DNA of 64,000 nucleotides from the IMG/VR virus record IMGVR_UViG_3300022200_000019, positions 124,001 through 188,000 of that record. One strand, 5' to 3'. Below are positions 9,281 to 37,311 of the stretch, one piece after another (the stretch's first letter is position 1; each line of letters opens with the position of its first letter). Made by a program: the position numbers and the translations under genes. Under the pieces are notes generated by a model. That model had not been told where the DNA came from, did no database searches, and worked only from the letters and a program-made list of their open reading frames with translations.

Positions 9281-9354
9281 GTAGGGATGGTATAATGGCA
9301 TTACGCTGGTCTCCAAAACCAGAGATTGAGGTTCGATCCCTTGTCCCTGCGCCA
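9281..9354 (+). tRNA. tRNA-Trp (CCA)
   Basis: Acceptor GTAGGGA/TCCCTGC, anticodon arm CTGGT-CTCCAAA-ACCAG, T-loop TTCGATC, encoded 3' CCA. Confidence 0.95.
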
Positions 9355-11980: not shown

Positions 11981-12009
11981 CTTGTTGTAAAAATACAACA
12001 AAAAAGTGG

Positions 12010-26477: not shown

Positions 26478-27188
26478 TTAATTCTGGTATAAATTTAAAA
26501 CTGTGTCAATAATTCTGTGTCGTTGAATGTCCTTGGTCGATAATTTACAAACAGTGATGCCAGATGTCTGTTCTTGAAGTCTAGCACAAAGATCAATAAG
26601 ACCATTTTCAGACTTACGGCGATCTGTTTGTTCTACGTCACCTGTTACAACAACCTTACTACCTTCACCAATACGTGTTAGTAGCATTTTCATTTGTCCA
26701 GGAGTGGCGTTTTGCATTTCATCTCCGATAATCCAAGCGTTTTTGAATGTGCGACCTCTCATAAATGCTAGTGGGGCAACTTCCACAATTTGTTCTTCTA
26801 ACATTCTTGCGATCTCTTGAGGCGTGTAATATTCACGTAATACGTCTAGTAATGGACGAGTCCAAGGTGCCATTTTTTCCTCAAGGGTACCTGGTAAGAA
26901 GCCATGCTGCTCATCTTCTACGCCTACTGCTGGTCTTGTTAGTACAATACGTTCGCAACGCCCCATTCTAAAACAACGGATTGCCGCTTGCATTGCTAGA
27001 TATGTTTTGCCTGTACCTGCTGGGCCATAAGCAATAACAATGTCAGTGCTTGGATCAAGTAATCCTACAATATAGTTCTCTTGATTAAGTGATTTAGGAA
27101 TTAACTCTGTTTGTCTTAGCTGTGTTTTTAATGCTGAATTAAAGTTAATAGTATTTTCATCTTTCTTTAAACGTTTGTTTCTAGCCAT
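26478..27188 (-). CDS. phoH: PhoH-family ATPase
   Basis: GPAGTGKT, LTRP, GFLPG, FMRGRTF, DEMQN, GD..Q; TAAATA (-) at 27212-27217. Confidence 0.95.
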   Translation of the reverse strand: MARNKRLKKDENTINFNSALKTQLRQTELIPKSLNQENYIVGLLDPSTDIVIAYGPAGTGKTYLAMQAAIRCFRMGRCERIVLTRPAVGVEDEQHGFLPGTLEEKMAPWTRPLLDVLREYYTPQEIARMLEEQIVEVAPLAFMRGRTFKNAWIIGDEMQNATPGQMKMLLTRIGEGSKVVVTGDVEQTDRRKSENGLIDLCARLQEQTSGITVCKLSTKDIQRHRIIDTVLNLYQN

Positions 27189-27348
27189 ATATCTCCTTCC
27201 TGACTTAATTTTATTTAAGGCCGCAATCAGATCAATATTACAGCTCAGTTATTGAAAATATTTTCGAGCTAAATAAATTTTTTGCACCCCTGAAAAACTT
27301 AAAATCACAAAATATATTCCCAGTCCTGTATCGCGCATACATAGTGTT

Positions 27349-27948
27349 ATGAACTTACCCAAACGTTTATTCTTTACAGGCGTACCAGGTTCTCGGTGGA
27401 GCGGCATTGCGCAGGTGCTAGAAGCACTACCAGGATTTAATACCACAGATCGCACACCAGAACGAACATACGAACACCATGCATACACAGGGCATGTGGG
27501 TGCATATTTTGGGCGTGGCATGGAATTCCCAGCTGAGCTGGATTTAGATACAATTGATAGTGCATGGACCGATCCAGCAGCTGGTACACAGATTGTTAAA
27601 AGTCATGACTGGGCGTATAAACTCAATGAAATACGAGCTGTTGCTAAAGAAAACGGAGATTGGATAATGCTTGTTTACCGTCCCGATTTAGCGAGTCAAG
27701 CATGGTGGCACGAGGCCGGTGGATTCCAAATTAAATATCCAAACTACGGTGTATACCGAGACCATGCAGGAATGCTTGCAGAGATTGTAGCACAAAACAA
27801 GGCTATACTAAAATTTGGCCGGGACGTTCTTGCTCGTTGGGATTATTTTGATGCGTCTTGGATTGCTGCAAAGTTTGGCATTCCGATTAATGATATTCCA
27901 GACATAACACCCTGGGATGACATACTCGTATCGGTGATAAAAATATGA
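27349..27948 (+). CDS. Hypothetical protein with P-loop-like N-terminus
   Basis: FFTGVPGSRWSG, VKSH; sulfotransferase-like fold is a guess. Confidence 0.65.
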   Translation: MNLPKRLFFTGVPGSRWSGIAQVLEALPGFNTTDRTPERTYEHHAYTGHVGAYFGRGMEFPAELDLDTIDSAWTDPAAGTQIVKSHDWAYKLNEIRAVAKENGDWIMLVYRPDLASQAWWHEAGGFQIKYPNYGVYRDHAGMLAEIVAQNKAILKFGRDVLARWDYFDASWIAAKFGIPINDIPDITPWDDILVSVIKI

Positions 27949-29195
27949 AAAATATATTAATAGTTGGAGATAGCTTTGCGGCCGACTGGACAGTAAAATA
28001 TAAAGATCATTATTTAGGATGGCCAAATTTGCTAGCAACTGACTTTAACGTAACTAATTTGGCGCAAGCCGGATGCGGGGAATATAAAATTTGGTTGCAA
28101 TTAACAAGTATTGATATTAAAGATTATGACTTCATTATTGTTAGTCATACTAGTCCATCTAGAATATATGTTAAAAACCATCCAATACACAACACTGATA
28201 CATTGCACAAGAACAGCGATTTAATTTACAATGATATTGTTAATCATTCAAAAAAACACAAAGAATTAAATGTTATAGTTAAATTTTTTGAAGAATATTT
28301 TGATTTGGATCAATCTGAATTTGTGCATAAATTAATACAACAACAAATTATTGACTATATAAAAGAAAAAACAGATGCGACAATTATAGAATTGTCGCAT
28401 ATCAAAGGAAATATTATACCTAATGCACGAGACACAATACAAGCTGAATTTTTATATCATGAAAAGCGGGCTGGGTTAATTAACCATTATACGCCCGACG
28501 ACAACAAAAAAGTATTTAATATACTAAAAAGCATAATTAATGAGCCGATATTACGTAATATCTCAGCTTTCAAATTTTCATTTCGTAAATCTGCATTTGA
28601 AGGATCTGATGACAAGTTAATATTGTATGAATATAACTCTCGTGGATTTCGAGATGCAGAATGGCCAAAATCAATCAACGAACTTAAAAAATGTATATGG
28701 TGTTTTGGCGATAGCCAAACAGTCGGTGTCGGTGATGCCTATGAAAATACCTGGCCTAAATTGTTAGAAAAAAAAATTAATAAACGTTGTATTAACGTTA
28801 GCATGGTTGATGCTAGCAACGATTGGATTTTCGATAGAGTTAAAATGATCATTGATGTTATAAAACCAAAATTTATTGTAATACAATGGTCTTTTCTGCA
28901 TCGGTATGAAGAAAATGCCGAGCAAAAACACTTTTGTGCCAATGAAATACTCGAGGATGATCTACGTTTAATTGACAAATTTGAAAAACAATATGACATT
29001 ATTGAACAACTAGCAAAGAAGAATAATGTTAAAATTATACATTCGTCGGTTCCGAACGATATATTAAATAACTGTCTTGAAATAATTGTAGAAGACTTTG
29101 CTCGCGATAGTTGTCACTATGGCGTTAAAACAGCAAATACATACACAGACAATGTTATTAAAAAAATAAAAGAATATGAACAGAAAGATTTTTAA
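27945..29195 (+). CDS. Tandem SGNH/GDSL-like hydrolase domains
   Basis: IVGDSFA...NLAQAGCG and CFGDSQT...NVSMVDAS; AT-rich. Confidence 0.75.
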   Translation: MKNILIVGDSFAADWTVKYKDHYLGWPNLLATDFNVTNLAQAGCGEYKIWLQLTSIDIKDYDFIIVSHTSPSRIYVKNHPIHNTDTLHKNSDLIYNDIVNHSKKHKELNVIVKFFEEYFDLDQSEFVHKLIQQQIIDYIKEKTDATIIELSHIKGNIIPNARDTIQAEFLYHEKRAGLINHYTPDDNKKVFNILKSIINEPILRNISAFKFSFRKSAFEGSDDKLILYEYNSRGFRDAEWPKSINELKKCIWCFGDSQTVGVGDAYENTWPKLLEKKINKRCINVSMVDASNDWIFDRVKMIIDVIKPKFIVIQWSFLHRYEENAEQKHFCANEILEDDLRLIDKFEKQYDIIEQLAKKNNVKIIHSSVPNDILNNCLEIIVEDFARDSCHYGVKTANTYTDNVIKKIKEYEQKDF

Positions 29196-29883
29196 TAAAC
29201 TCTTAGAAATAGTTAAGACAAGTCCGCAACTGCTGCTTGATAACCATTTATTAGGACAGGCCATTGCTGGGGAATTCAACGTTAAATTGGATGTTGTTAA
29301 CATCGACATTATTAAATTGGTTAACCAAATTGAAGAAGCTGTATTAGAACAATACTTCTCAAGGACATGGCAGCCCGAAACTAAAAAGTACAAGTATAGC
29401 GGACTAGCTATCATTGATCAAGTAAACTCGCTGAATCCAGATGCAGTACTTGACGCTGGCTGTGGATATAACGAGTTTAAAGGGAAGATTCAAAATTTAA
29501 CAGGCATCGATCCGTATAATGATCGTGCTGACATTAACGCACATATTTTAGACTACAAAACTGATGTAGAATACGATGTTGTTATTTGTTTAGGTAGTAT
29601 CAACTTCGGCACAGCTGATAAGATTTTTCAAGAAGTGCAGAAAGTGGTTAAATTAACTAAACCAGGCGGCTTAATTATCTTTCGCGTAAATCCTGGTATT
29701 CAACACGTTGCTAGAGAAAGTAAATGGATTGATTTTTTTGAGTGGGACATACCGTTCATTTTGAACGTAGCATATGCATTAAATTGTTCGGTAAAAGAAT
29801 TACACACAGATACATCACAAGATAAAAATCAGACATTGCTCAATGGCGAACGTTTATATTTTGTACTAGAAAAACAGCACTAA
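29176..29883 (+). CDS. Class I SAM-dependent methyltransferase
   Basis: VLDAGCGYN, GIDP, YDVVICLGSINF, LTKPGG. Confidence 0.85.
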   Translation: MNRKIFNKLLEIVKTSPQLLLDNHLLGQAIAGEFNVKLDVVNIDIIKLVNQIEEAVLEQYFSRTWQPETKKYKYSGLAIIDQVNSLNPDAVLDAGCGYNEFKGKIQNLTGIDPYNDRADINAHILDYKTDVEYDVVICLGSINFGTADKIFQEVQKVVKLTKPGGLIIFRVNPGIQHVARESKWIDFFEWDIPFILNVAYALNCSVKELHTDTSQDKNQTLLNGERLYFVLEKQH

Positions 29884-29976
29884 ATACCTCAAAACAACGA
29901 GTGTTGTTTGTTTCTTTGAATAAAAATTGCTGATAGCGATTGCTCTATGTATTAACATATGTCATAATAGGAAATC

Positions 29977-31434
29977 ATGTCACCTGATCATATCCTTTGG
30001 TTAATAGCTGGTATTATTTACGGACTGGTAGTAGGTATTATTCCTGTTGCTGGCGCAACAACCGGCTTGATTACAGTATTTTCATTTATTGGTATCTTTC
30101 AATACGGCGATCCTTATGCCGGGGTAGTATTCACTACAGCGTTAGTCGCAGCAAGTGCCATTGGCGATTCGTTCGCCAGCGTAGTAATGAATATCCCAGG
30201 TGCCAATGGTAGTGCCGCTACAATGATTGATGGATTTCCACTAGCACGTAAAGGTAAAGGAGCATATGCTCTATCCTCTGCAATTACTACGAGCACAATT
30301 AACGGCTTATTATGGGGAGTAATAGTATTTTATATGCTGCCATATTACGGAAGTCTAATGATGATACTAGGAGTTCCGGAAATATTTGGGTTAATGATAT
30401 TGGCATTAACGTGCATTGTATTCCTAAACAATCAGTATTGGGTGCGTGGTATAATTGCTATTGCATTGGGTATATTCTTAGGCTTAGTGGGAACAGACCC
30501 AGATACAAATGCAGCACGTTGGACAGGTGGCTGGTTCTATTTAGAAGATGGCATTCAAATAATGGCGCTACTATCTGGACTGTTAGCATTTCCTGAACTA
30601 ATTGAAGGATTACGCAATCATGGTAAACCAACCCCGCTTACCTCAAGAACACAATGGGGGCAAGTATGGGATGGTATTAAGGACAGTTGGCGCTATCGCT
30701 GGTTAGGCTTTAGAGGCGGTGTAGTTGGTGCTATTGTAGGCGCACTTCCTGGTTTAGGCGGCAATATTGCTGACTGGATGGCTTACGCACAAACAACAGC
30801 TACTTGTAAAAATGAAAAAATTCCGTTTGGTCAAGGAAATATTAAAGGTGTTATTGGTTGTGAGGGTGCCAACAATGCACATAAAGCAACCGCATATTTG
30901 CCGACTGTTTTGTTTGGTATTCCCGGTGCTCCGTTTGCCGCCGTAGTACTGGGACTGTTTTCATATCTCGGTTTTGAACTAGGTTCTATTAGCCTATTAG
31001 ATGACAAACAATTTTTTGAAAGTCTTACTGCCGGTTATATGTGGGCATTGGTACTCACTTTCCCTGTTGCATTATTAACTATACGTTGGTTAACAATGAT
31101 GACTCAATTACCGTTTAAGTATTTCTTTTGGCCTATTCTAGCAACTATTGTTTGGGCAAGCGTACAATACACAGGTGGGTGGGAAGATTATGCTGTATTA
31201 GTTATTTTTACGATATTAGGTTTATTCTTACGCAAATACAAGTTTAGTCGTCCGGCTCTTGTTATTGGCTTTATTTTATCCGACAAAATCGAAGCACTAT
31301 ATAAACAAGTGAGTGTTCTTTATACGCCAGAACAGTTGATCTCTCGTCCAGGATTTGTTATAATACTCGTGTTAACTGTGATTGCACTAGTATATGGACT
31401 GTTCTTTCACAAAAACAAAATTGAATTCACTTAA
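29977..31434 (+). CDS. Tripartite tricarboxylate transporter permease (TctA-like)
   Basis: NIPGANGSAATMIDGFPLA, LGLVGTDP, GNIKGVIGCEGANNA, LFGIPG; many TM helices. Confidence 0.9.
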   Translation: MSPDHILWLIAGIIYGLVVGIIPVAGATTGLITVFSFIGIFQYGDPYAGVVFTTALVAASAIGDSFASVVMNIPGANGSAATMIDGFPLARKGKGAYALSSAITTSTINGLLWGVIVFYMLPYYGSLMMILGVPEIFGLMILALTCIVFLNNQYWVRGIIAIALGIFLGLVGTDPDTNAARWTGGWFYLEDGIQIMALLSGLLAFPELIEGLRNHGKPTPLTSRTQWGQVWDGIKDSWRYRWLGFRGGVVGAIVGALPGLGGNIADWMAYAQTTATCKNEKIPFGQGNIKGVIGCEGANNAHKATAYLPTVLFGIPGAPFAAVVLGLFSYLGFELGSISLLDDKQFFESLTAGYMWALVLTFPVALLTIRWLTMMTQLPFKYFFWPILATIVWASVQYTGGWEDYAVLVIFTILGLFLRKYKFSRPALVIGFILSDKIEALYKQVSVLYTPEQLISRPGFVIILVLTVIALVYGLFFHKNKIEFT

Positions 31435-31443
31435 GGAGAAACT

Positions 31444-32613
31444 ATGAAAAAGTGGTTGGCCGCAATGGCTATGTTTGTCGCGTTACCTGCGAGCGCAACA
31501 TATACAATGATTATTCCGCAGGAAGCAGGCGGCGGTACTAGTGTATGGGCTAGTATTATTGCTAAACATCTCGAAAAGCATCTAGGTGAAGAGATTGTAT
31601 TACAGCACATTCCGGGTGCTCGCGATATTCCAGCATTTAACAAATTTCACAATGAACTACAGAACGATGACAAAACTATTATGGTAAGTCATGGTGGCAA
31701 TGCTGAAAGTTACCTCATTGAGGAAGTTGATTACAACTACAAGGAATATGAGCCTATTGGCGGTATGAATCTGTCAATTGTAACTGCTGGTCGCACAGGC
31801 ACTGATCCAACCAAGGATCCAATCCGCTTTAGTTCTGGTTCAGGAAATAACCCGGATGTAATGGCATTTACATTGCTTGCGTGCGGTGAGTTGCCTACAA
31901 TTGATGATTATGTTGCGTGTTTTAAAGATAAAGTTACATTTGTTAAGGGCATGAAATCTGGTGATCGTCGTCTTGCATTTATGCGTGGTGAACTAAATGC
32001 TACTCGCGAATCAACCGCTGCGTTTATTAAGCACGTCCAGCCATTGATTGATAAAGGCGAAGCAGAACTTTGGTTCAGTCACGGTGTACTTGATCTTGAA
32101 ACTGGCTTAGTTATGCCCGACGACAACTATTCCGTTGGTAGTTTTGATCAATACTATTTCCAGAAGTACAGTAAAAACCCAAGTGGTCCGTTGTACGATG
32201 CATACATCCTTGTAAAGCAGTATCGCGATGCACTACAGAAAGCACTATGGATGCGTAAAGGTAACCCAAATGCGCCAGCAGTTAAGGCTGCACTTGTAGC
32301 AATGCTTGCTGATCCAGAAGCACAGGCTGCTATTGAAAAGAAAGCAGGTAAGTATGGCTGGAATGTTGGCCCAGATTTGCTCAAAGCTGTAGACATTCTA
32401 AGTAACTTAACCAAGCGTCAAGCACTACAGGATCTTGTTCAATTCCAAGCTGAGGCACTTGGTGTTAAGGCTGTGTACAAAGCAGACATCACTGTGGATG
32501 CCAACGCTGCTGAACGTATGGTGAACAATACCTCACGCAGATTAGACCAAGCAGAAGAATCCTCTCTTAGTGCAACTGATCGTGCAATTAAATGGGTTAA
32601 AGACTTGTTCTAA
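31444..32613 (+). CDS. Periplasmic solute-binding protein (TctC/Bug-like)
   Basis: Signal peptide, IIPQEAGGGTSVW, IPG motif; adjacent to tctA-like gene. Confidence 0.7.
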   Translation: MKKWLAAMAMFVALPASATYTMIIPQEAGGGTSVWASIIAKHLEKHLGEEIVLQHIPGARDIPAFNKFHNELQNDDKTIMVSHGGNAESYLIEEVDYNYKEYEPIGGMNLSIVTAGRTGTDPTKDPIRFSSGSGNNPDVMAFTLLACGELPTIDDYVACFKDKVTFVKGMKSGDRRLAFMRGELNATRESTAAFIKHVQPLIDKGEAELWFSHGVLDLETGLVMPDDNYSVGSFDQYYFQKYSKNPSGPLYDAYILVKQYRDALQKALWMRKGNPNAPAVKAALVAMLADPEAQAAIEKKAGKYGWNVGPDLLKAVDILSNLTKRQALQDLVQFQAEALGVKAVYKADITVDANAAERMVNNTSRRLDQAEESSLSATDRAIKWVKDLF

Positions 32614-32970
32614 ATGGAATTGCTACTAACAAACGCAATTTATGTATCATATCGTTTGTTAGTTAGCGGGCCAATAGTTCGTACATTAAACAGGTATCTT
32701 ACGTATTACTTGGCTGTGTTTGTAATGGCACAGTTAAGTTTTGCGTATGATACCTTCGTCTTTGGATACTATTTTAATGCTCAGGAATTACCCCACATAT
32801 TAGATTACTTGTATTCTGATTTATTGTACACGTTACGAGTTATTGCTGCTTGGTGGGTAATTAAGCAATTATGGAATTGGATTGGCAACTATTGGATAGC
32901 GGTATTCTTAGGTGCTGAATTAACTTTTGTAACAGACTATTTCATTTTTAAAGATTTATTTGTAGGCTAA
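32614..32970 (+). CDS. Small multi-TM protein (possible TctB analogue)
   Basis: 118 aa, mostly hydrophobic; follows the binding protein. Confidence 0.6.
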   Translation: MELLLTNAIYVSYRLLVSGPIVRTLNRYLTYYLAVFVMAQLSFAYDTFVFGYYFNAQELPHILDYLYSDLLYTLRVIAAWWVIKQLWNWIGNYWIAVFLGAELTFVTDYFIFKDLFVG

Positions 32971-33104
32971 ATACATTTGGTATCGCAAGATACTATCCAT
33001 TTTGTGTTTGAATTATTTACAACAACGAGTGTTGTTGGTCTTTAGAGTTAAAGTCTTTTAAATAAGACAAACATTCACATTTTAAACATAAAGAGGATAT
33101 TCAA

Positions 33105-33788
33105 ATGTCATTTAACGCAAAAGCCTACGTGGCACAAGTTAAGGCGGATAATGCAGAACTATTTGCTGCTAGCCGTGAAAACGCAAAAAACTACTTCACT
33201 AGCAACCCTTCAAAAGAAGAATTAGTAGATCACTTCGTTGGTCGTATGGTTAATGAGCGTATGAACATGGTTGAAATTTCAAACCGTGTTGCTTCTATGC
33301 CAGCCGATACTAGCCCAGAAGAATTAGAAATGCTATCAAAGCAAGCCTTTGACGAAGCAGTTCACTTCAAGCTAGTTAAAGAAGTTATCGAACACATTGC
33401 CGGTGGTGAAATCAATGTTGCTGAAAAGATTGAATCGGCAGCAGGCGCAGAAGTTGCAGAAGGTAACTACGCTAAGGGTGCTACCCTACTAGCTAAGTAC
33501 GAAGCATCTACTGATCCAGTTTCACTAGCACTATATCAGCTAATTGCTGAAGGCCGTGCTGAGCAAGTTTGGGACGAAATGGCTAACTGCATCGAAGATA
33601 CATACGTATCTAGCCGTTATGCAAAGATCGCTCGTGACGAAGGTTTCCACAGCAACATCGGTGCTTGGAAGCTAGAAAAAATGCTAGAAGCTAACCCAGC
33701 TCTAGTTGCCCGTGTTGAAGAATTAGCACCACAAATGCGTGCTGACCTAATGCACATCAGCAACGAGAATACTGCTCTAGCAGCATAA
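33105..33788 (+). CDS. Ferritin-like di-iron protein
   Basis: Two ExxH motifs (DEAVH, DEGFH) plus NERMN, IAEGR; strongly biased codons. Confidence 0.75.
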   Translation: MSFNAKAYVAQVKADNAELFAASRENAKNYFTSNPSKEELVDHFVGRMVNERMNMVEISNRVASMPADTSPEELEMLSKQAFDEAVHFKLVKEVIEHIAGGEINVAEKIESAAGAEVAEGNYAKGATLLAKYEASTDPVSLALYQLIAEGRAEQVWDEMANCIEDTYVSSRYAKIARDEGFHSNIGAWKLEKMLEANPALVARVEELAPQMRADLMHISNENTALAA

Positions 33789-34327
33789 TGAATATTGGAC
33801 TCACTCAACGAGTCTTAGTTCATAACCAACAAGCGTATGACTCAATAGATCAAGCGTGGTATCGCTACCTAGAGGGTCATACGCTTTCTTTTATTCCTAA
33901 TAGAACAGATCAAGACTTTAAGCAATTAGCAGACACACTAGACTGTCTTATAATTACCGGCGGCGACGATAGTCCACTGCGACGTATAACCGAATTAAAA
34001 ATAGCAACAGAAATGATGAAACAGCAAAAACCTATATTAGGCGTTTGTCATGGAGCATTTTTGTTACAAGATGTGTTAGGCGGAAAAATCAAATCTGTCA
34101 ATGGCCATTATGATACAGAGCATACAGTATATTATAACAATCAAGAATTTACAGTTAACAGTTACCATACATTGAGCATTGAATCAGCACATGGAAAAAC
34201 ACTAGTTGTCGATTCCAATAATAATGCCGAAGCATGGATAGATGGCAATATTGCTGGTATTGTATGGCATCCTGAACGTATGGAACAACCTTGGCTACCA
34301 AATGAAATTTTTAAATTAATATTTTAA
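33788..34327 (+). CDS. Class I glutamine amidotransferase / PuuD-like (peptidase C26)
   Basis: LIITGG, GVCHG, VNSYH, WHPE. Confidence 0.9.
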   Translation: MNIGLTQRVLVHNQQAYDSIDQAWYRYLEGHTLSFIPNRTDQDFKQLADTLDCLIITGGDDSPLRRITELKIATEMMKQQKPILGVCHGAFLLQDVLGGKIKSVNGHYDTEHTVYYNNQEFTVNSYHTLSIESAHGKTLVVDSNNNAEAWIDGNIAGIVWHPERMEQPWLPNEIFKLIF

Positions 34328-34336
34328 CATCCCGTC

Positions 34337-34365
34337 TTGACGCATGATATATACTAATGTATAAT
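34337..34365 (+). promoter_or_regulatory. Sigma70-type promoter of amt
   Basis: TTGACG-17 bp-TATAAT. Confidence 0.85.
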
Positions 34366-34431
34366 GACAATCATAAGTGAGTTATTATACACTTATAAAC
34401 GTAAGACAATTTAATATTAAGGAGTTTTTAT

Positions 34432-35586
34432 ATGGAATTAGGCTATGCCTTAAACACCTTCTACTTCCTCATGTCAGCGGTGCTGGTTATGTGGATGGCA
34501 GCAGGTTTCACTATGTTGGAAGCAGGTAGTGTTCGAGTAAAGAATGTTACTGAAATCCTTGTTAAGAATGTTTCGCTTTATGCAGTAGCATCTCTTACAT
34601 ATCTTTTCTTAGGTTATGAACTAATGTACGGTTGGAGCCAGCCTGAAGATCACGCCATGATGAGTGATTTCTTCTTCCAGGTTGTGTTTGTAGCAACCGC
34701 AATGTCGGTTGTATCAGGTGCAGTTGCTGAACGAAAGAAACTTTGGTCTTTCTTGGTCTTTGCAGCAGTTTTCACCGCAGTCATTTATCCAATCCAAGGT
34801 TCTTGGTCTTGGGGCGGCGGCTGGTTGTCTGAAGCAGGATTTTTTGACTTTGCCGGTTCAGGTATTGTACACATGGCAGGTGCAGCAGCAGCATTAGCAG
34901 CAGTATTGCTAATTGGTCCACGTGCCGGTAAGTACGTTGATGGCAAGCCAGTAGCAATTCATGGATCTAACAGTGGTCAAGTAGCACTGGGTATGTTGAT
35001 TCTTTGGATGGGTTGGTTTGGGTTCAACGGTGGTTCTCAGTTGTCTATCATTGGTAACGAAAACGCAGATGCAGTTGCTCAAATCTTTGTAAACACAAAT
35101 ACAGCGGCAGCAGCAGGTTTGATTGTTGCTATGTTGTTGTCTAAGTTGTGGACTGGTAAGACTGCTCTTAACGCAACAGTAAATGGTGCATTGGCAGGTT
35201 TGGTTGTTATTACTGCTGACCCACTTACACCTTCTGCTGAAATGGCAGCACTATACGGTGGACTTGGTGGTTTGATTGTAGTGCCAGCAATGTCTCTGCT
35301 TGAAAAGTGGGGTATTGATGATCCAGTGGGTGCTATCTCGGTTCATGGTGTCGCAGGTATTCTAGGTCTGCTACTTGTTCCTGTACTTAACGCCGATGCT
35401 ACTCTAATGGCACAGTTGATCGGTACTGGCGCAATCTTTGGATTCGTATTTGTTGCTTCATTGATTGTATGGACAGTTTTGAAGTACACAATTGGCATTC
35501 GTGTCGGCGAAGAAGAAGAGCTTGCTGGTTCAGATATGTGGGAAGGCACAGGCGCTGCTTATCCTGACTTTATGAATAACAAGTAA
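34432..35586 (+). CDS. amt: Ammonium transporter
   Basis: GFTMLEAG, GAVAER, DFAGSGIVH, WFGFNGGS, DDPVGAISVHG (both His present). Confidence 0.97.
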   Translation: MELGYALNTFYFLMSAVLVMWMAAGFTMLEAGSVRVKNVTEILVKNVSLYAVASLTYLFLGYELMYGWSQPEDHAMMSDFFFQVVFVATAMSVVSGAVAERKKLWSFLVFAAVFTAVIYPIQGSWSWGGGWLSEAGFFDFAGSGIVHMAGAAAALAAVLLIGPRAGKYVDGKPVAIHGSNSGQVALGMLILWMGWFGFNGGSQLSIIGNENADAVAQIFVNTNTAAAAGLIVAMLLSKLWTGKTALNATVNGALAGLVVITADPLTPSAEMAALYGGLGGLIVVPAMSLLEKWGIDDPVGAISVHGVAGILGLLLVPVLNADATLMAQLIGTGAIFGFVFVASLIVWTVLKYTIGIRVGEEEELAGSDMWEGTGAAYPDFMNNK

Positions 35587-35607
35587 ACACAAATCTTACG
35601 TTGCATC

Positions 35608-35632
35608 AAAGCAGCCTTCGGGCTGCTTTTTT
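35608..35632 (+). terminator. Rho-independent terminator
   Basis: AAAGCAGCC-TTCG-GGCTGCTTT followed by a T run. Confidence 0.9.
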
Positions 35633-35644
35633 ATTGGTAAACCT

Positions 35645-35688
35645 TGTAACAAAAATTTAACAAAAGTGTAATAAAACGGTAACGGTTT
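35645..35688 (+). promoter_or_regulatory. Pho-box-like array (4 x 11-bp direct repeats) upstream of pstS
   Basis: TGTAACAAAAA/TTTAACAAAAG/TGTAATAAAAC/GGTAACGGTTT in exact 11-bp register. Confidence 0.7.
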
Positions 35689-35729
35689 TATGTTTAAATA
35701 ATGTTGATAAAACAAGGAGAAAAGAAGCA

Positions 35730-36686
35730 ATGAAAAGACTAATTGCGTTTTTTGCCGCACTGGCAATTAGCACAAGTGCTTTCGCAGGGGCGAAAGTAGA
35801 CACACAGTTACCAAACTATCATAAAGTTTCAGGTGTTAGTGGTAATTTAAACTCGGTGGGCTCAGATACATTAGCAAATTTAATGACTATGTGGGCTGAG
35901 GAATTTCGTAAAATATATCCTAATGTTAACATTGGTATTCAAGCAGCGGGATCAAGCACTGCCCCGCCAGCACTAACTGAAGGAACTTCAAATGTTGGTC
36001 CAATGAGTCGTAAGATGAAGGATAAAGAACTACAAGCATTTGAGGCAAAGTATGGATATAAACCAACTGCTATTCCTGTTGCTATTGATGCGTTAGCAGT
36101 ATTTGTTAACAAGGACAATCCTATTAAAGGATTAACGATTGCTGAAGTTGACGCAATCTTCTCAAGCACAAGAAAGTGCGGTGCTAAACAAGACGCAATT
36201 AAATGGGGCGATGTAGGGTTAACTGGCTCCTGGACAAATCGCACAATTCAATTGTATGGTCGTAATTCTGTATCTGGCACCTACGGCTACTTTAAGAAAA
36301 AAGCACTTTGTAAAGGGGATTACAAAAATGATGTAAATGAACAACCAGGTTCAGCATCTGTAGTACAAAGTGTCACAGGTAGTATAAATGGCATTGGTTA
36401 CTCAGGTATGGGTTACAAGACTTCTGGTGTAAAAACTGTTCCATTAAGCAAGAAAGGCGGTCCATACGTGGACGCAACACCTGAAAATGCATTAAATGGT
36501 TCATACCCACTGGCACGTTTTTTATACATTTATGTAAACAAGGCTCCTAATAAGCCGTTAGATCCAATGACATACGAATTTATTCGTATGGTTCTATCCA
36601 AGCAAGGACAAACAGTTGTAGTCAAAGATGGCTATGTTCCGTTACCTGCTGATATGGCTGAGAAATTATTGAAAACTGTTCAATGA
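35730..36686 (+). CDS. pstS: Phosphate ABC transporter substrate-binding protein
   Basis: Signal peptide; [48 protein letters not shown]. Confidence 0.95.
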
Positions 36687-36712
36687 TAACTATCTAGACT
36701 GCAACAAAAATT

Positions 36713-36738
36713 AAAGCAGCCTTCGGGCTGCTTTTTTT
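36713..36738 (+). terminator. Rho-independent terminator identical to the one at 35608
   Basis: AAAGCAGCCTTCGGGCTGCTTTTTTT; T-tract overlaps TATAAATA (36738-36745). Confidence 0.9.
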
Positions 36739-36750
36739 ATAAATAGTATT

Positions 36751-37311
36751 ATGGATAAAGATTTTTTCAAAGACGATAAGGCATATTGGCAGATTGCTGA
36801 TGAAGTTAAAGGCATTTATCTGAGTGATGGCTCAATGGCAAGTTTAATTGACTTTGAGCGTGTATTAGATGAAGTAGACATCTACGCTTTTGCTAACTGG
36901 GAAGATGGCGAACTTGTTAAAGGCCCAGACATCGGACGTTATAAAGTAACTTGTACTTTTATGTGGCCAGAGCGTATGATGCCTGATCCACGTGGTGCTA
37001 AACGTTTATTACCGTTTGACTGCGATGTATCGTTTTTGAAAACTGTTCTACAAGTTCCTGCTAAAGTTAAATCGTATGATGACTTTAAGCCCGGTACTAA
37101 AAAACCAAAAATGATTGACATGCCAGTATGGCTTGTTGAAATCACTATGCCAAAGGATCTAATGTCAGATATTCGCACTGGTTCAATTGAACTAGAAGGT
37201 CAGGATATTGATCTAGAAGATCTGGACGCAGCATACGAACAAGACTTAGATCAACAAGAAACTCAAGACATCGAAACACAAGAAGAAGCAGACGAAGCAT
37301 TTGCAGGTTAA
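36751..37311 (+). CDS. Conserved jumbo-phage hypothetical protein
   Basis: 186 aa; TATAAATA 5 nt upstream; acidic tail. Confidence 0.8.
   Translation: MDKDFFKDDKAYWQIADEVKGIYLSDGSMASLIDFERVLDEVDIYAFANWEDGELVKGPDIGRYKVTCTFMWPERMMPDPRGAKRLLPFDCDVSFLKTVLQVPAKVKSYDDFKPGTKKPKMIDMPVWLVEITMPKDLMSDIRTGSIELEGQDIDLEDLDAAYEQDLDQQETQDIETQEEADEAFAG

What the first reader, a model, noticed from the sequence alone, without database searches (positions are those of the whole stretch)
29881..33104. Shared structured 5' leaders with GAGU-loop hairpins upstream of tctA and the ferritin-like gene
Seen: the identical 16-mer AACAAC-GAGT-GTTGTT occurs at 29893-29908 and 33021-33036, each shortly after a TAAATA; the closing pair differs compensatorily (A-T versus C-G). 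The 33.0 kb leader also has GTATC-GCAA-GATAC (32980-32993), a second GAGT-loop hairpin CTTTA-GAGT-TAAAG, GTCTT/AAGAC, and a 12-bp helix TTTGTGTTTGAA (33001-12) / TTTAAACATAAA (33081-92, two G-U pairs) ending right at the SD GAGGA. Inference: a cis-regulatory RNA (protein- or ligand-responsive) or a palindromic operator co-regulating the cluster.
Basis: partly seen in the sequence, partly recalled or inferred. Interest (0 to 1): 0.6.

Follow-up and report, generated by a model that had tools for sequence, protein, structure and literature searches.

The report
Conserved GAGU-loop hairpin in phage leaders
Two neighbouring nutrient-uptake operons of an uncultured giant phage carry the same small RNA hairpin (7-bp stem, GAGU loop) in their leaders. 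The hairpin is kept in several related phage lineages through compensating mutations, so it is probably a real, undescribed control or stability element, though what it binds is unknown.

Summary
The window is part of a 213-kb record of an uncultured jumbo myovirus. The 16-mer occurs only twice in that record, in the leaders of tctA and of a ferritin-like (R2-like di-iron) gene.

It is not chance. It is the core of a 7-bp hairpin with an invariant GAGU loop. I found the hairpin in the window's clade, two more distant lineages of the ferritin-like gene, and a further phage group where it heads a tctC-tctA cassette. In 10 distinct copies, 70 of 70 stem positions pair and 6 of 7 pairs show double (compensatory) changes. 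There are six G·U cells and no A·C cell, which points to an RNA on the mRNA strand.

Outside the window's ferritin leader, the hairpin starts 4-8 nt after TAAATA, the most enriched intergenic hexamer and a T4-late-like promoter motif. It would therefore sit at the 5' end of the transcript.

The ferritin leader also folds into a conserved structure (z = -6) whose long helix covers the Shine-Dalgarno. That helix does not vary, so covariation cannot test it.

The hairpin is not a terminator and matches no Rfam family. The trans-acting partner and the effect on expression are unknown. No RNA data were available.

The parts
29881..29886 (+). TAAATA promoter-like motif of the tctA leader. Its TAA is also the stop codon of the upstream 235-aa methyltransferase-like gene.
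   Evidence: Sequence. TAAATA is the most enriched intergenic hexamer at 6.4-fold, with 29 copies against 7 on the other strand. A spacer of 4-7 nt to 20 start codons. ATAAATA is predicted as a late promoter in related jumbo phages (PMC5259590).
29892..29909 (+). GAGU hairpin, copy 1: AAACAAC-GAGT-GTTGTTT. It starts 5 nt after TAAATA.
   Evidence: It is 100% conserved in L091 and L094/95 while the flanks diverge. The same motif stands ahead of tctC in group X contigs. Covariation.
29884..29976 (+). tctA leader (93 nt), with AGGAAA as the Shine-Dalgarno. Present in some strains and absent in others.
   Evidence: Absent in L085, L087, L088, L092 and L093 (ATGA overlap).
29977..32970 (+). tctA (485 aa), a TctC-like binding protein (389 aa) and a small TctB-like membrane protein (118 aa).
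   Evidence: Pfam TctA at 8.5e-89. The 389-aa protein is 34% identical to the protein encoded next to tctA in L184. The 'TctC-like' and 'TctB-like' names are inferred from gene position only.
32968..32973 (+). TAAATA motif of the ferritin-like gene leader. Its TAA is the stop codon of the TctB-like gene.
   Evidence: CTAAATA is kept in all 7 close strains.
32978..32995 (+). Hairpin I: TGGTATC-GCAA-GATACTA. It starts 5 nt after TAAATA, at the predicted 5' end of the transcript.
   Evidence: Loop variants are GCAA, GCGA and AGGA, and L092/93 carry a U·G stem variant. In L088 it is replaced by an unrelated hairpin, AGCATT-ACTTA-AATGCT, at the same place.
32994..33012 (+). 5' strand of the long-range helix: UAUCC (anti-SD, 32994-98), a bulged A, then UUUUGUGUUUGAA.
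   Evidence: MFE. Alifold consensus. Invariant in 8 strains.
33020..33037 (+). GAGU hairpin, copy 2: CAACAAC-GAGT-GTTGTTG, inside the long helix.
   Evidence: In relatives the stem changes A-U to G-C twice, C-G to U·G once, and shows a G·U intermediate in L088.
33040..33068 (+). Weak inner stems (CTTTA-GAGT-TAAAG; GTCTT..AAGAC) and a non-conserved inner TAAATA (33059-64).
   Evidence: The loop is GAG in relatives, the inner TAAATA is absent in relatives, and the folds differ between strains.
33081..33100 (+). 3' strand of the long helix, running into the Shine-Dalgarno (GAGGA 33093-97; GGAUA pairs with UAUCC).
   Evidence: The translation initiation region of this gene ranks third least accessible of 85 genes.
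33105..34327 (+). Ferritin-like (R2-like di-iron) gene (227 aa) and a class-I glutamine amidotransferase (179 aa): the operon behind the second leader.
   Evidence: There are 221 relatives in IMG/VR and none in cultured phages.

Best explanation
The 16-mer is the core of a conserved RNA stem-loop with a 7-bp stem of free sequence and a fixed GAGU tetraloop. It is carried in the 5' leaders of auxiliary nutrient-uptake operons of a clade of uncultured jumbo myoviruses.

Shown:
- It is selected as a hairpin on the mRNA strand.
- It recurs ahead of tct cassettes and of the ferritin-like gene in several lineages.
- Except in the window clade's ferritin leader, it begins 4-8 nt after the TAAATA motif.

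Inferred:
- TAAATA is a T4-late-type promoter with +1 about 5-6 nt downstream. The hairpin, or hairpin I in the window's ferritin leader, would then form the extreme 5' end of the transcript, where a stem-loop protects mRNA from 5'-end-dependent decay.
- Because the loop is invariant while the stems drift, and because copy 2 sits in an internal position, I think the GAGU loop is also read by a common trans-acting factor. The most likely candidate is a phage or host RNA-binding protein. That would tie expression of the tct operon to that of the ferritin-like/amidotransferase operon.
- In the ferritin leader the hairpin is nested in a conserved long-range helix of 13 + 4-5 bp that pairs the Shine-Dalgarno with an upstream UAUCC. 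Translation of that gene is therefore probably held down until the helix is opened or cut.
For: Hairpin under selection:
- In 10 distinct copies from 4 lineages, 70 of 70 stem cells pair and 6 of 7 pairs have double changes.
- The covariation score is 0.683 against 0.281 for shuffles (0 of 500 as high), and slid registers collapse to 26-70% paired.
- The loop GAGU is invariant.
- There are six G·U or U·G cells and no A·C cell.
- Among close strains the ferritin copy goes from CAACAAC/GUUGUUG to CAGUAGC/GCUGCUG, with CAACAGC/GUUGUUG as an intermediate.

Recurrence:
- L098 (68% aa), L049/L054 (58% aa), and group X (L177, L178, L184, L191, L192).
- In group X it follows a 50%-identical homologue of the window's upstream gene and precedes tctC-tctA.
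- Model R1 finds no other copy in the genome or in about 1.2 Mb of related loci.

Promoter reading:
- TAAATA enrichment and strand bias.
- Spacer peak of 4-7 nt to 20 of 55 start codons.
- In 42 non-redundant distant homologues, TAAATA is followed by a hairpin (median start 4 nt; mean z = -2.46; p = 2e-11). The upstream gene is mostly divergent there, so the hairpin cannot be its terminator.
- Related jumbo phages have a predicted ATAAATA late promoter. The DNA polymerase is nearest to Atu_ph07, Phosso and CBB.

SD masking:
- z = -6.
- The same fold appears in 7 strains at -31 to -34 kcal/mol.
- Accessibility rank is 3 of 85.
- L098 has its own UAUCCUUUA/UAAAGGA pairing.
Against: - No transcript data: no RNA run was listed. 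The promoter, the +1 position and even co-transcription are all inferred.
- No gp55-like late sigma was found in the 61%-complete record. This is inconclusive, because the control genomes did not ring either.
- The long helix never varies, so it has no covariation support.
- Much of the hairpin variation comes from close strains, so independent events are few: roughly 4 lineages plus 2-3 strain-level changes.
- The broader family of TAAATA-proximal hairpins shows no strand asymmetry (E+ -8.5 against E- -7.7 kcal/mol, p = 0.22).
- Five close strains do without the tctA leader entirely, so it is dispensable.
- No candidate binding protein was identified.
- C(GAGU)G is not a known stable or protein-bound tetraloop (and my own recollection of tetraloop tables).
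Confidence: 0.6

Rival explanations
1. Generic 5'-terminal stabiliser only. The hairpin merely caps the 5' end of late-promoter transcripts against RNase E/RppH-type decay. The GAGU loop and the identity of the two copies reflect common descent, not recognition by a factor.
For: Hairpins of unrelated sequence occupy the same place after TAAATA in 42 homologous leaders and in L088. Hairpin I, not the GAGU hairpin, is 5'-terminal in the window's ferritin leader. The amt leader also begins with a hairpin just after a TTGACG-17-TATAAT promoter. From established knowledge, the sequence of a 5'-terminal stem-loop does not matter for stabilisation (Emory, Bouvet and Belasco 1992; from memory).
Against: The loop is invariant across lineages whose proteins are only 34-68% identical, while 6 of 7 stem pairs changed. 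Copy 2 lies 47 nt from the predicted 5' end yet is still maintained by compensatory changes.
Confidence: 0.25
2. Palindromic DNA operator. The inverted repeat binds a dimeric phage or host transcription factor at the promoter of both operons.
For: It is an inverted repeat that overlaps the predicted transcription start. It is identical in two promoter regions. Type-A distant homologues share the outer arms TACAA..TTGTA with an AAAATTTT centre, and show no strand asymmetry in folding energy.
Against: Half-site sequences are not conserved (AACAAC, AGTAGC, GTGCAAC, CAGTAGA) while complementarity is. Single changes are always G·U-compatible on the + strand (6 against 0 A·C), and these break DNA symmetry. 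The conserved part is the asymmetric centre GAGT.
Confidence: 0.08
3. Cassette-boundary repeat, like the promoter/stem-loop PeSL modules of T4-type phages. The promoter-plus-hairpin module brackets the tctABC cassette because recombination between such modules moved the cassette. The identity reflects that history rather than shared regulation.
For: - The two copies bracket exactly tctA-tctC-tctB, and apart from the hairpin the leaders share only CTAAATAC.
- The island is a mosaic among strains of 75-90% DNA identity. The GDSL-like gene, amt+pstS, an extra gene after tctB and the tctA leader itself each come and go, with junctions at TAAATA/hairpin modules.
- In L083 the tct genes lie downstream of the ferritin/amidotransferase pair.
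- Identical UUCG terminators bracket pstS.
- PeSL biology: PMC2839356 and PMC4122927.
Against: This does not explain loop invariance with stem covariation, or why the motif precedes tct genes in distant phages at the same junction. The shared stretch of 16-19 nt is short for homologous recombination. No sigma-70 early promoter is present at these two sites. This reading can hold alongside the main one.
Confidence: 0.15
4. Intrinsic terminator or attenuator ending the upstream genes (the methyltransferase-like gene, and tctB).
For: Each copy follows a stop codon. Copy 1 is followed by GTTTCTTTG, which is conserved in L091 and L094.
Against: The stem is A/U-rich with only 2 G-C pairs, and the terminator scan did not call it, whereas the real terminators here are AAAGCAGCC-TTCG-GGCTGCTTT plus a T-run. 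Copy 2, L098, L049 and group X have no U-tract. In distant homologues the upstream gene is divergent.
Confidence: 0.05
5. The 134-nt ferritin leader is a ligand-sensing riboswitch, a three-way junction closed by the SD-masking helix. The GAGU hairpin would be one of its arms.
For: There is a stable, conserved multi-stem fold with the SD in the closing helix. The downstream genes concern metal and nitrogen metabolism.
Against: No Rfam match appears even at E <= 10. The architecture is not kept in L098, L049 or the type-A/B homologues. The same hairpin also occurs alone in the short tctA leader.
Confidence: 0.07

Closest known systems
PeSL (promoter-early stem-loop) cassettes of T4-type phages (Arbiol et al. 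2010, PMC2839356; Comeau et al. 2014, PMC4122927)
   Same: Both are short composite promoter + stem-loop modules repeated in a hyperplastic region. They flank non-essential or auxiliary genes that are gained and lost between close strains.
   Different: PeSLs carry a sigma-70 early promoter and a G/C-rich terminator stem placed in or before the promoter. Here the motif is late-type TAAATA, the stem is A/U-rich, it follows the promoter, and it has a fixed GAGU loop with covarying stems. Recombination at these sites was not shown. A closer PeSL look-alike exists elsewhere in this genome: the 22-mer hairpin in front of TTGACA-17-TATAnT.
5'-terminal stabilising stem-loops of bacterial and phage mRNAs (e.g. 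the ompA 5' UTR; Emory, Bouvet and Belasco 1992, from memory)
   Same: The hairpin is placed at, or within a few nucleotides of, the predicted transcript 5' end. Stem sequence is free and pairing is maintained.
   Different: Loop sequence is irrelevant in those elements, whereas here it is invariant. One copy here is internal. The 5' ends are not mapped.
Phage lambda N leader (nutL boxB hairpin plus an RNase III-sensitive stem controlling N translation), from memory
   Same: A promoter-proximal small hairpin with a specific loop lies upstream of a long stem that governs access to the Shine-Dalgarno of the first gene. The same hairpin type is repeated in two operon leaders.
   Different: boxB is a 5-bp stem with a GNRA-like pentaloop, paired with boxA and read by N. 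Here there is no boxA and no N homologue, and antitermination is not indicated. The resemblance is one of layout only.
T4 late-gene translational masking (lysozyme gene e, soc, gene 49, I-TevI: SD hidden in long early transcripts, with a late TATAAATA promoter inside the hairpin), from memory
   Same: A T4-late-like motif and an SD-masking hairpin occur in the same leader. In the window a TAAATA (33059) lies between the two strands of the masking helix.
   Different: That inner TAAATA is absent from all close relatives, so the mechanism is not conserved here.

Membership tests
Any Rfam 15 family | Covariance-model score at or above the family's gathering threshold | tested here: not met
   The gathering scan of the whole window gave only a tRNA. 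The E <= 10 scan of 29800-33200 gave only eukaryotic snoRNA/miRNA-type noise far below threshold.
PeSL cassette | Strong sigma-70 consensus early promoter (TTGACA-17-TATAAT with an AT-rich upstream region) inside the module | tested here: not met
   No hit of 10 or more matches out of 12 lies in either leader. The motif present is TAAATA.
PeSL cassette | Adjacent stable stem-loop acting as a terminator or attenuator | tested here: inconclusive
   A stem-loop is present, but it is A/U-rich, lies downstream of the promoter motif, and lacks a U-tract in most lineages. Terminator activity cannot be tested here.
PeSL cassette | Indels and replacements between close genomes with ends at the modules | tested here: met
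   In L088 an extra gene joins at 32995, right after a TAAATA + hairpin module. The amt+pstS indel ends at TAAATA 36740. The tctA leader is present or absent between strains.
Intrinsic (Rho-independent) terminator | G+C-rich stem followed directly by a U-tract | tested here: not met
   It is not called by the scan, which does find the UUCG terminators at 35608 and 36713. There are only 2 G-C pairs, and copy 2 and the other lineages have no U-tract.
T4-type late promoter | TATAAATA-like element with no -35 box, upstream of many genes at a fixed short distance from the start site | tested here: inconclusive
   The TAAATA core is enriched 6.4-fold and strand-specific. The spacer peaks at 4-7 nt before 20 start codons. 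The usual context is (G)CA-TAAATA rather than TA-TAAATA. Start sites are not mapped.
T4-type late promoter | Phage-encoded gp55-type late sigma factor | tested here: inconclusive
   phrog_234 and phrog_12791 were not found in the record. However, the record is only 61% complete and the control genomes gave no signal either.
lambda-type nut site (boxA/boxB) | boxB 5-bp stem with a GNRA-like pentaloop, a nearby boxA, and an N-type antiterminator | not tested
   The loop is a tetraloop GAGU, which is not GNRA. No search was made for boxA or for an N homologue.
Conserved cis-regulatory RNA hairpin (generic class) | Base pairing maintained by compensatory substitutions across homologues, on the transcribed strand | tested here: met
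   70 of 70 cells paired, 6 of 7 pairs with double changes, 0 of 500 shuffles as good, and only G·U exceptions. Alifold on close strains gives the same result.

The most novel reading that the evidence does not exclude
The GAGU hairpin is the operator of a so far unidentified phage-encoded RNA-binding regulator. That regulator would jointly switch a small regulon of nutrient-acquisition genes (TTT-family transporter; ferritin-like/amidotransferase, and through read-through amt) in a widespread clade of uncultured aquatic jumbo phages. In the ferritin leader it would work together with an SD-masking long-range helix. This would be a phage-owned post-transcriptional circuit for auxiliary metabolic genes.
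Probability: 0.25. Interest if true: 0.65.

Novelty: new member of a known kind. Interest (0 to 1): 0.45.

Why it matters
Auxiliary metabolic genes of environmental phages are usually catalogued as gene lists, and almost nothing is known about how their expression is controlled. This locus offers a compact, testable cis-element. It has real comparative support and links two nutrient-uptake operons in an uncultured jumbo-phage clade whose ferritin-like marker gene has hundreds of relatives in metagenomes.

It also adds a second leader with a masked ribosome-binding site. If the element binds a factor, it could be used to find the regulator and to define a phage regulon. If it is only a 5' cap-like stabiliser, it still documents a consistent 'late promoter + 5' hairpin' design. 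It also shows, in natural strain variation, how promoter/hairpin modules mark the seams of cassette shuffling.

Tried and rejected
- **Chance repeat.** Rejected.
- **Terminator.** Rejected (plus the lack of U-tracts in other lineages).
- **Coding.** The ferritin leader holds a 22-codon TTG-to-TAG frame with no SD. Between strains its changes are all non-synonymous (TTTSVVG to TVASAAD), and the candidate frames in L098 and the window differ in phase. I therefore reject a leader peptide (read).
- **Recent intragenomic copy as the full explanation of the identity.** Weakened, because the same hairpin heads tct genes in distant group X phages.
- **T4 lysozyme-style inner late promoter.** The inner TAAATA is not conserved.
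- **Second GAGT hairpin in L098.** It is more likely part of a 13-bp helix.
- **Fur, NtcA or Pho-type boxes in the two leaders.** No convincing match by eye; not pursued.
- **RNA evidence.** The look-up of sequencing runs listed no RNA run.
- **Cultured relatives.** No cultured phage has the region or the ferritin-like gene. The TctA matches in cultured-phage records are under 30% identical and look bacterial.
- **Pattern scan for the CAGTAG-type stem**. It returned only the contigs of L049 and L054 plus coding-sequence chance hits.
- **Strand-asymmetry test on the wider hairpin family.** Not significant.
- **gp55 search.** Negative but uninformative.
- **One script** died on a faulty shuffle routine and was rerun with mononucleotide shuffles.

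Full report
**Where the window lies.** It is bases 124,001-188,000 of a 212,917-nt IMG/VR virus record that CheckV rates 61% complete. The DNA is 39% G+C, and almost all genes are on the + strand. The record encodes a tail sheath, tail tube, large terminase, class I RNR and a family-B DNA polymerase. The polymerase is nearest (42-50% aa) to jumbo myoviruses Atu_ph07, Phosso, XacN1-like phages, CBB and the PBECO4 group.

The finding sits in an island of auxiliary genes:
- phoH on the minus strand
- an unknown 199-aa gene
- a GDSL-like gene
- a 235-aa methyltransferase-like gene
- tctA, a TctC-like gene and a TctB-like gene
- a ferritin-like (R2-like di-iron) gene
- a class-I glutamine amidotransferase
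- amt
- a PstS-like gene

**The observation.** The 16-mer has two copies in the window and in the whole record. Exact 16-17-mers do repeat by chance in 213 kb. However, the genome has only 34 intergenic tetraloop hairpins with stems of 6 bp or more, and this identical pair is among them. The ferritin leader is strongly structured at -38.4 kcal/mol, z = -6.0. The tctA leader is not, apart from its hairpin (z = 0.0). Rfam has nothing here.

**TAAATA.** This hexamer is the most enriched in intergenic DNA of the genome, at 6.4-fold, with 29 intergenic copies against 7 for its reverse complement. It stands upstream of many + strand genes, usually as (G)CA-TAAATA.

The spacer between it and the start codon has a sharp peak. 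Twenty of 55 genes have 4-7 nt, none has 0-3 or 8, and the rest have 15-40 nt and carry a Shine-Dalgarno. In T4 the late promoter TATAAATA lies about 5 nt before +1 (established knowledge). An ATAAATA late-promoter motif and a gp55-like sigma have been predicted for the related jumbo phages CBB and GAP32 (PMC5259590).

I therefore read TAAATA as a late-type promoter with +1 about 5-6 nt downstream. This is an inference. No gp55 homologue turned up in this incomplete record, and no RNA run was listed.

**Comparative evidence, distant homologues.** It has none in cultured phages.

In 42 non-redundant leaders, a conserved (G/C)(A/G)TAAATA(A/T) lies 60-100 nt before the ATG. A hairpin follows it, starting at a median of 4 nt after the motif. 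These segments fold better than shuffles (mean z = -2.46, p = 2e-11). The stems differ between phages: ACAACAG..CTGTTGT, ACAAAGAG..CTCTTGT, GTGATAAG..CTTATCAC and GTGTATCGATACAC. In most of these loci the upstream gene is divergent, so the hairpin cannot be its terminator. Folding energies of the two strands do not differ significantly (p = 0.22).

**Comparative evidence, close strains.** Contigs L085-L095 carry proteins 97-99% identical and DNA 75-90% identical. In the ferritin leader the GAGU hairpin reads:
- CAACAAC-GAGT-GTTGTTG in the window, L091 and L094/95
- CAGTAGC-GAGT-GCTGCTG in L085, L086, L087, L092 and L093
- CAACAGC-GAGT-GTTGTTG in L088

That amounts to two A-U to G-C double changes, one C-G to U·G change, and one G·U intermediate, with the loop untouched.

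Hairpin I keeps its stem while its loop varies (GCAA, GCGA, AGGA), and it has a U·G variant. In L088 an extra gene has been inserted after tctB. The junction lies exactly at 32995, and that gene brings its own CTAAATA plus an unrelated hairpin at the same spacing.

The tctA leader, with the hairpin unchanged but the flanks diverged, is present in the window, L091 and L094/95. It is absent in L085, L087, L088, L092 and L093, where the upstream gene and tctA overlap in ATGA.

**The same hairpin in other lineages.**
- L098 (68% aa): TAAATA-ACATA-GTGCAAC-GAGT-GTTGTGC.
- L049/L054 (58% aa): GCATAAATA-ATAATG-CAGTAGA-GAGT-TCTACTG.
- A pattern scan of IMG/VR found five contigs (L177, L178, L184, L191, L192) with GGATAAATA-N8-GCAAC-GAGT-GTTGC.

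In those five contigs the motif follows a homologue of the window's 235-aa gene (50% aa). It precedes a tctC-like gene (34% aa) and tctA (Pfam 1.5e-75). This is the same junction as in the window, in phages that are far apart.

On ten distinct copies:
- all 70 stem cells pair
- 6 of 7 pairs show double changes
- no shuffle of 500 reaches the observed values
- slid registers fall to 26-70% paired
- the loop is invariant
- the non-Watson-Crick cells are six G·U and no A·C

This pattern is what an RNA hairpin on the + strand would produce. A DNA palindrome or a minus-strand RNA would not. Two caveats apply: the number of independent lineages is small, and the group X contigs were found with a pattern that fixed the inner four pairs and the loop. 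A covariance model built from TAAATA plus the hairpin finds no further copy in the rest of the genome or in about 1.2 Mb of related loci. GAGT loops are not generally enriched in those loci.

**The ferritin leader fold.** All seven close strains fold the same way, at -31 to -34 kcal/mol. The elements, in order, are:
- a 5' hairpin at the predicted +1
- UAUCC pairing with the GGAUA of the Shine-Dalgarno region
- a one-base bulge or 1x1 loop
- a 13-bp helix (two G·U pairs) enclosing the GAGU hairpin and variable inner stems

RNAalifold recovers the helix and the hairpin. The helix is invariant, so covariation says nothing for or against it. L098 masks its SD with its own UAUCCUUUA/UAAAGGA pairing, which supports the theme.

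Among 85 genes of the genome with an SD-like motif, the ferritin-like gene has the third least accessible initiation region. amt has the least accessible, and tctA is average.

**Interpretation.**
- *Shown:* a conserved + strand hairpin with a fixed GAGU loop, shared by the leaders of tct cassettes and ferritin-like genes, and placed just after a promoter-like motif.
- *Inferred:* it forms or lies near the 5' end of late-type transcripts; it stabilises them; and, because the loop is fixed and one copy is internal, it is read by a common factor.
- *Inferred:* the ferritin-like gene is additionally under translational control through SD masking.

The plain-stabiliser, DNA-operator, terminator, riboswitch and cassette-seam readings are weighed in the rival list. 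The cassette-seam (PeSL-like) reading is compatible with the main one and has real support from the strain mosaic. It does not explain the loop conservation.

**Novelty.** No Rfam family matches, and a literature search found no described GAGU tetraloop element. The kind of element, a 5' leader stem-loop or operator, is well known. This would be a new member of that kind, so far restricted to a clade of uncultured aquatic jumbo phages.

Noticed in passing
window 35608-35632 and 36713-36737: Two identical 25-nt UUCG-loop terminators (AAAGCAGCC-TTCG-GGCTGCTTT + T-run) stand either side of the PstS-like gene. In strains L094/L095 the whole amt+pstS block (about 34321-36738) is absent, and the junction falls right at the TAAATA of the next gene (36740).
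   Followed up: partly
window 11982-12003 and genome 115674-115695 (L169:15674-15695): An identical 22-mer hairpin, TTGTTGTA-AAAA-TACAACAA(AA), lies 6-7 nt upstream of near-consensus sigma-70 promoters (TTGACA-17-TATACT and TTGACA-17-TATATT) in two divergent intergenic regions. This is a much closer look-alike of T4-type PeSL modules than the finding itself.
   Followed up: partly
whole genome G000; e.g. window 8615, 13431, 36740, 39826, 52850, 56500, 63440: Twenty of 55 genes with a nearby TAAATA have it exactly 4-7 nt before the start codon, with no Shine-Dalgarno. This suggests either leaderless late mRNAs or a non-SD initiation signal.
   Followed up: partly
window 35641-35690: Upstream of the PstS-like gene there are four direct repeats phased at 11 nt (TGTAACAAAAA / TTTAACAAAAG / TGTAATAAAAC / GGTAACGGTTT). 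The layout resembles a PhoB-type Pho box, so host phosphate-starvation control of the phage pstS is possible.
   Followed up: no
window 34328-34431: The amt leader has the best sigma-70-like promoter of the region (TTGACG-17-TATAAT, 34337-34365). About 14 nt downstream lies a hairpin, ATAAGTG-N10-CACTTAT. The amt initiation region is the least accessible of 85 genes tested.
   Followed up: partly
window 27000-37000 against L085-L095; L083: The auxiliary-gene island is a strain-level mosaic. The GDSL-like gene (27945-29195) is missing in several strains. L094 has about 600 extra nt between tctA and tctC, and L088 has an extra 242-aa gene after tctB. In L083 the order is ferritin-like, amidotransferase, tctA, tctC, tctB with no intergenic gaps.
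   Followed up: partly
L007, L009, L012, L024, L039 (about 22 nt before the ferritin-like ATG): Many distant homologues carry the perfect palindrome TTAAATATATTTAA just before the SD. It offers TAAATA on both strands, facing the divergent upstream gene across the shared hairpin. Overlapping divergent 5' UTRs are therefore possible, which might explain why that hairpin family shows no strand asymmetry.
   Followed up: no
window 9281-9354: A single tRNA-Trp (CCA) gene lies in the phage window.
   Followed up: no
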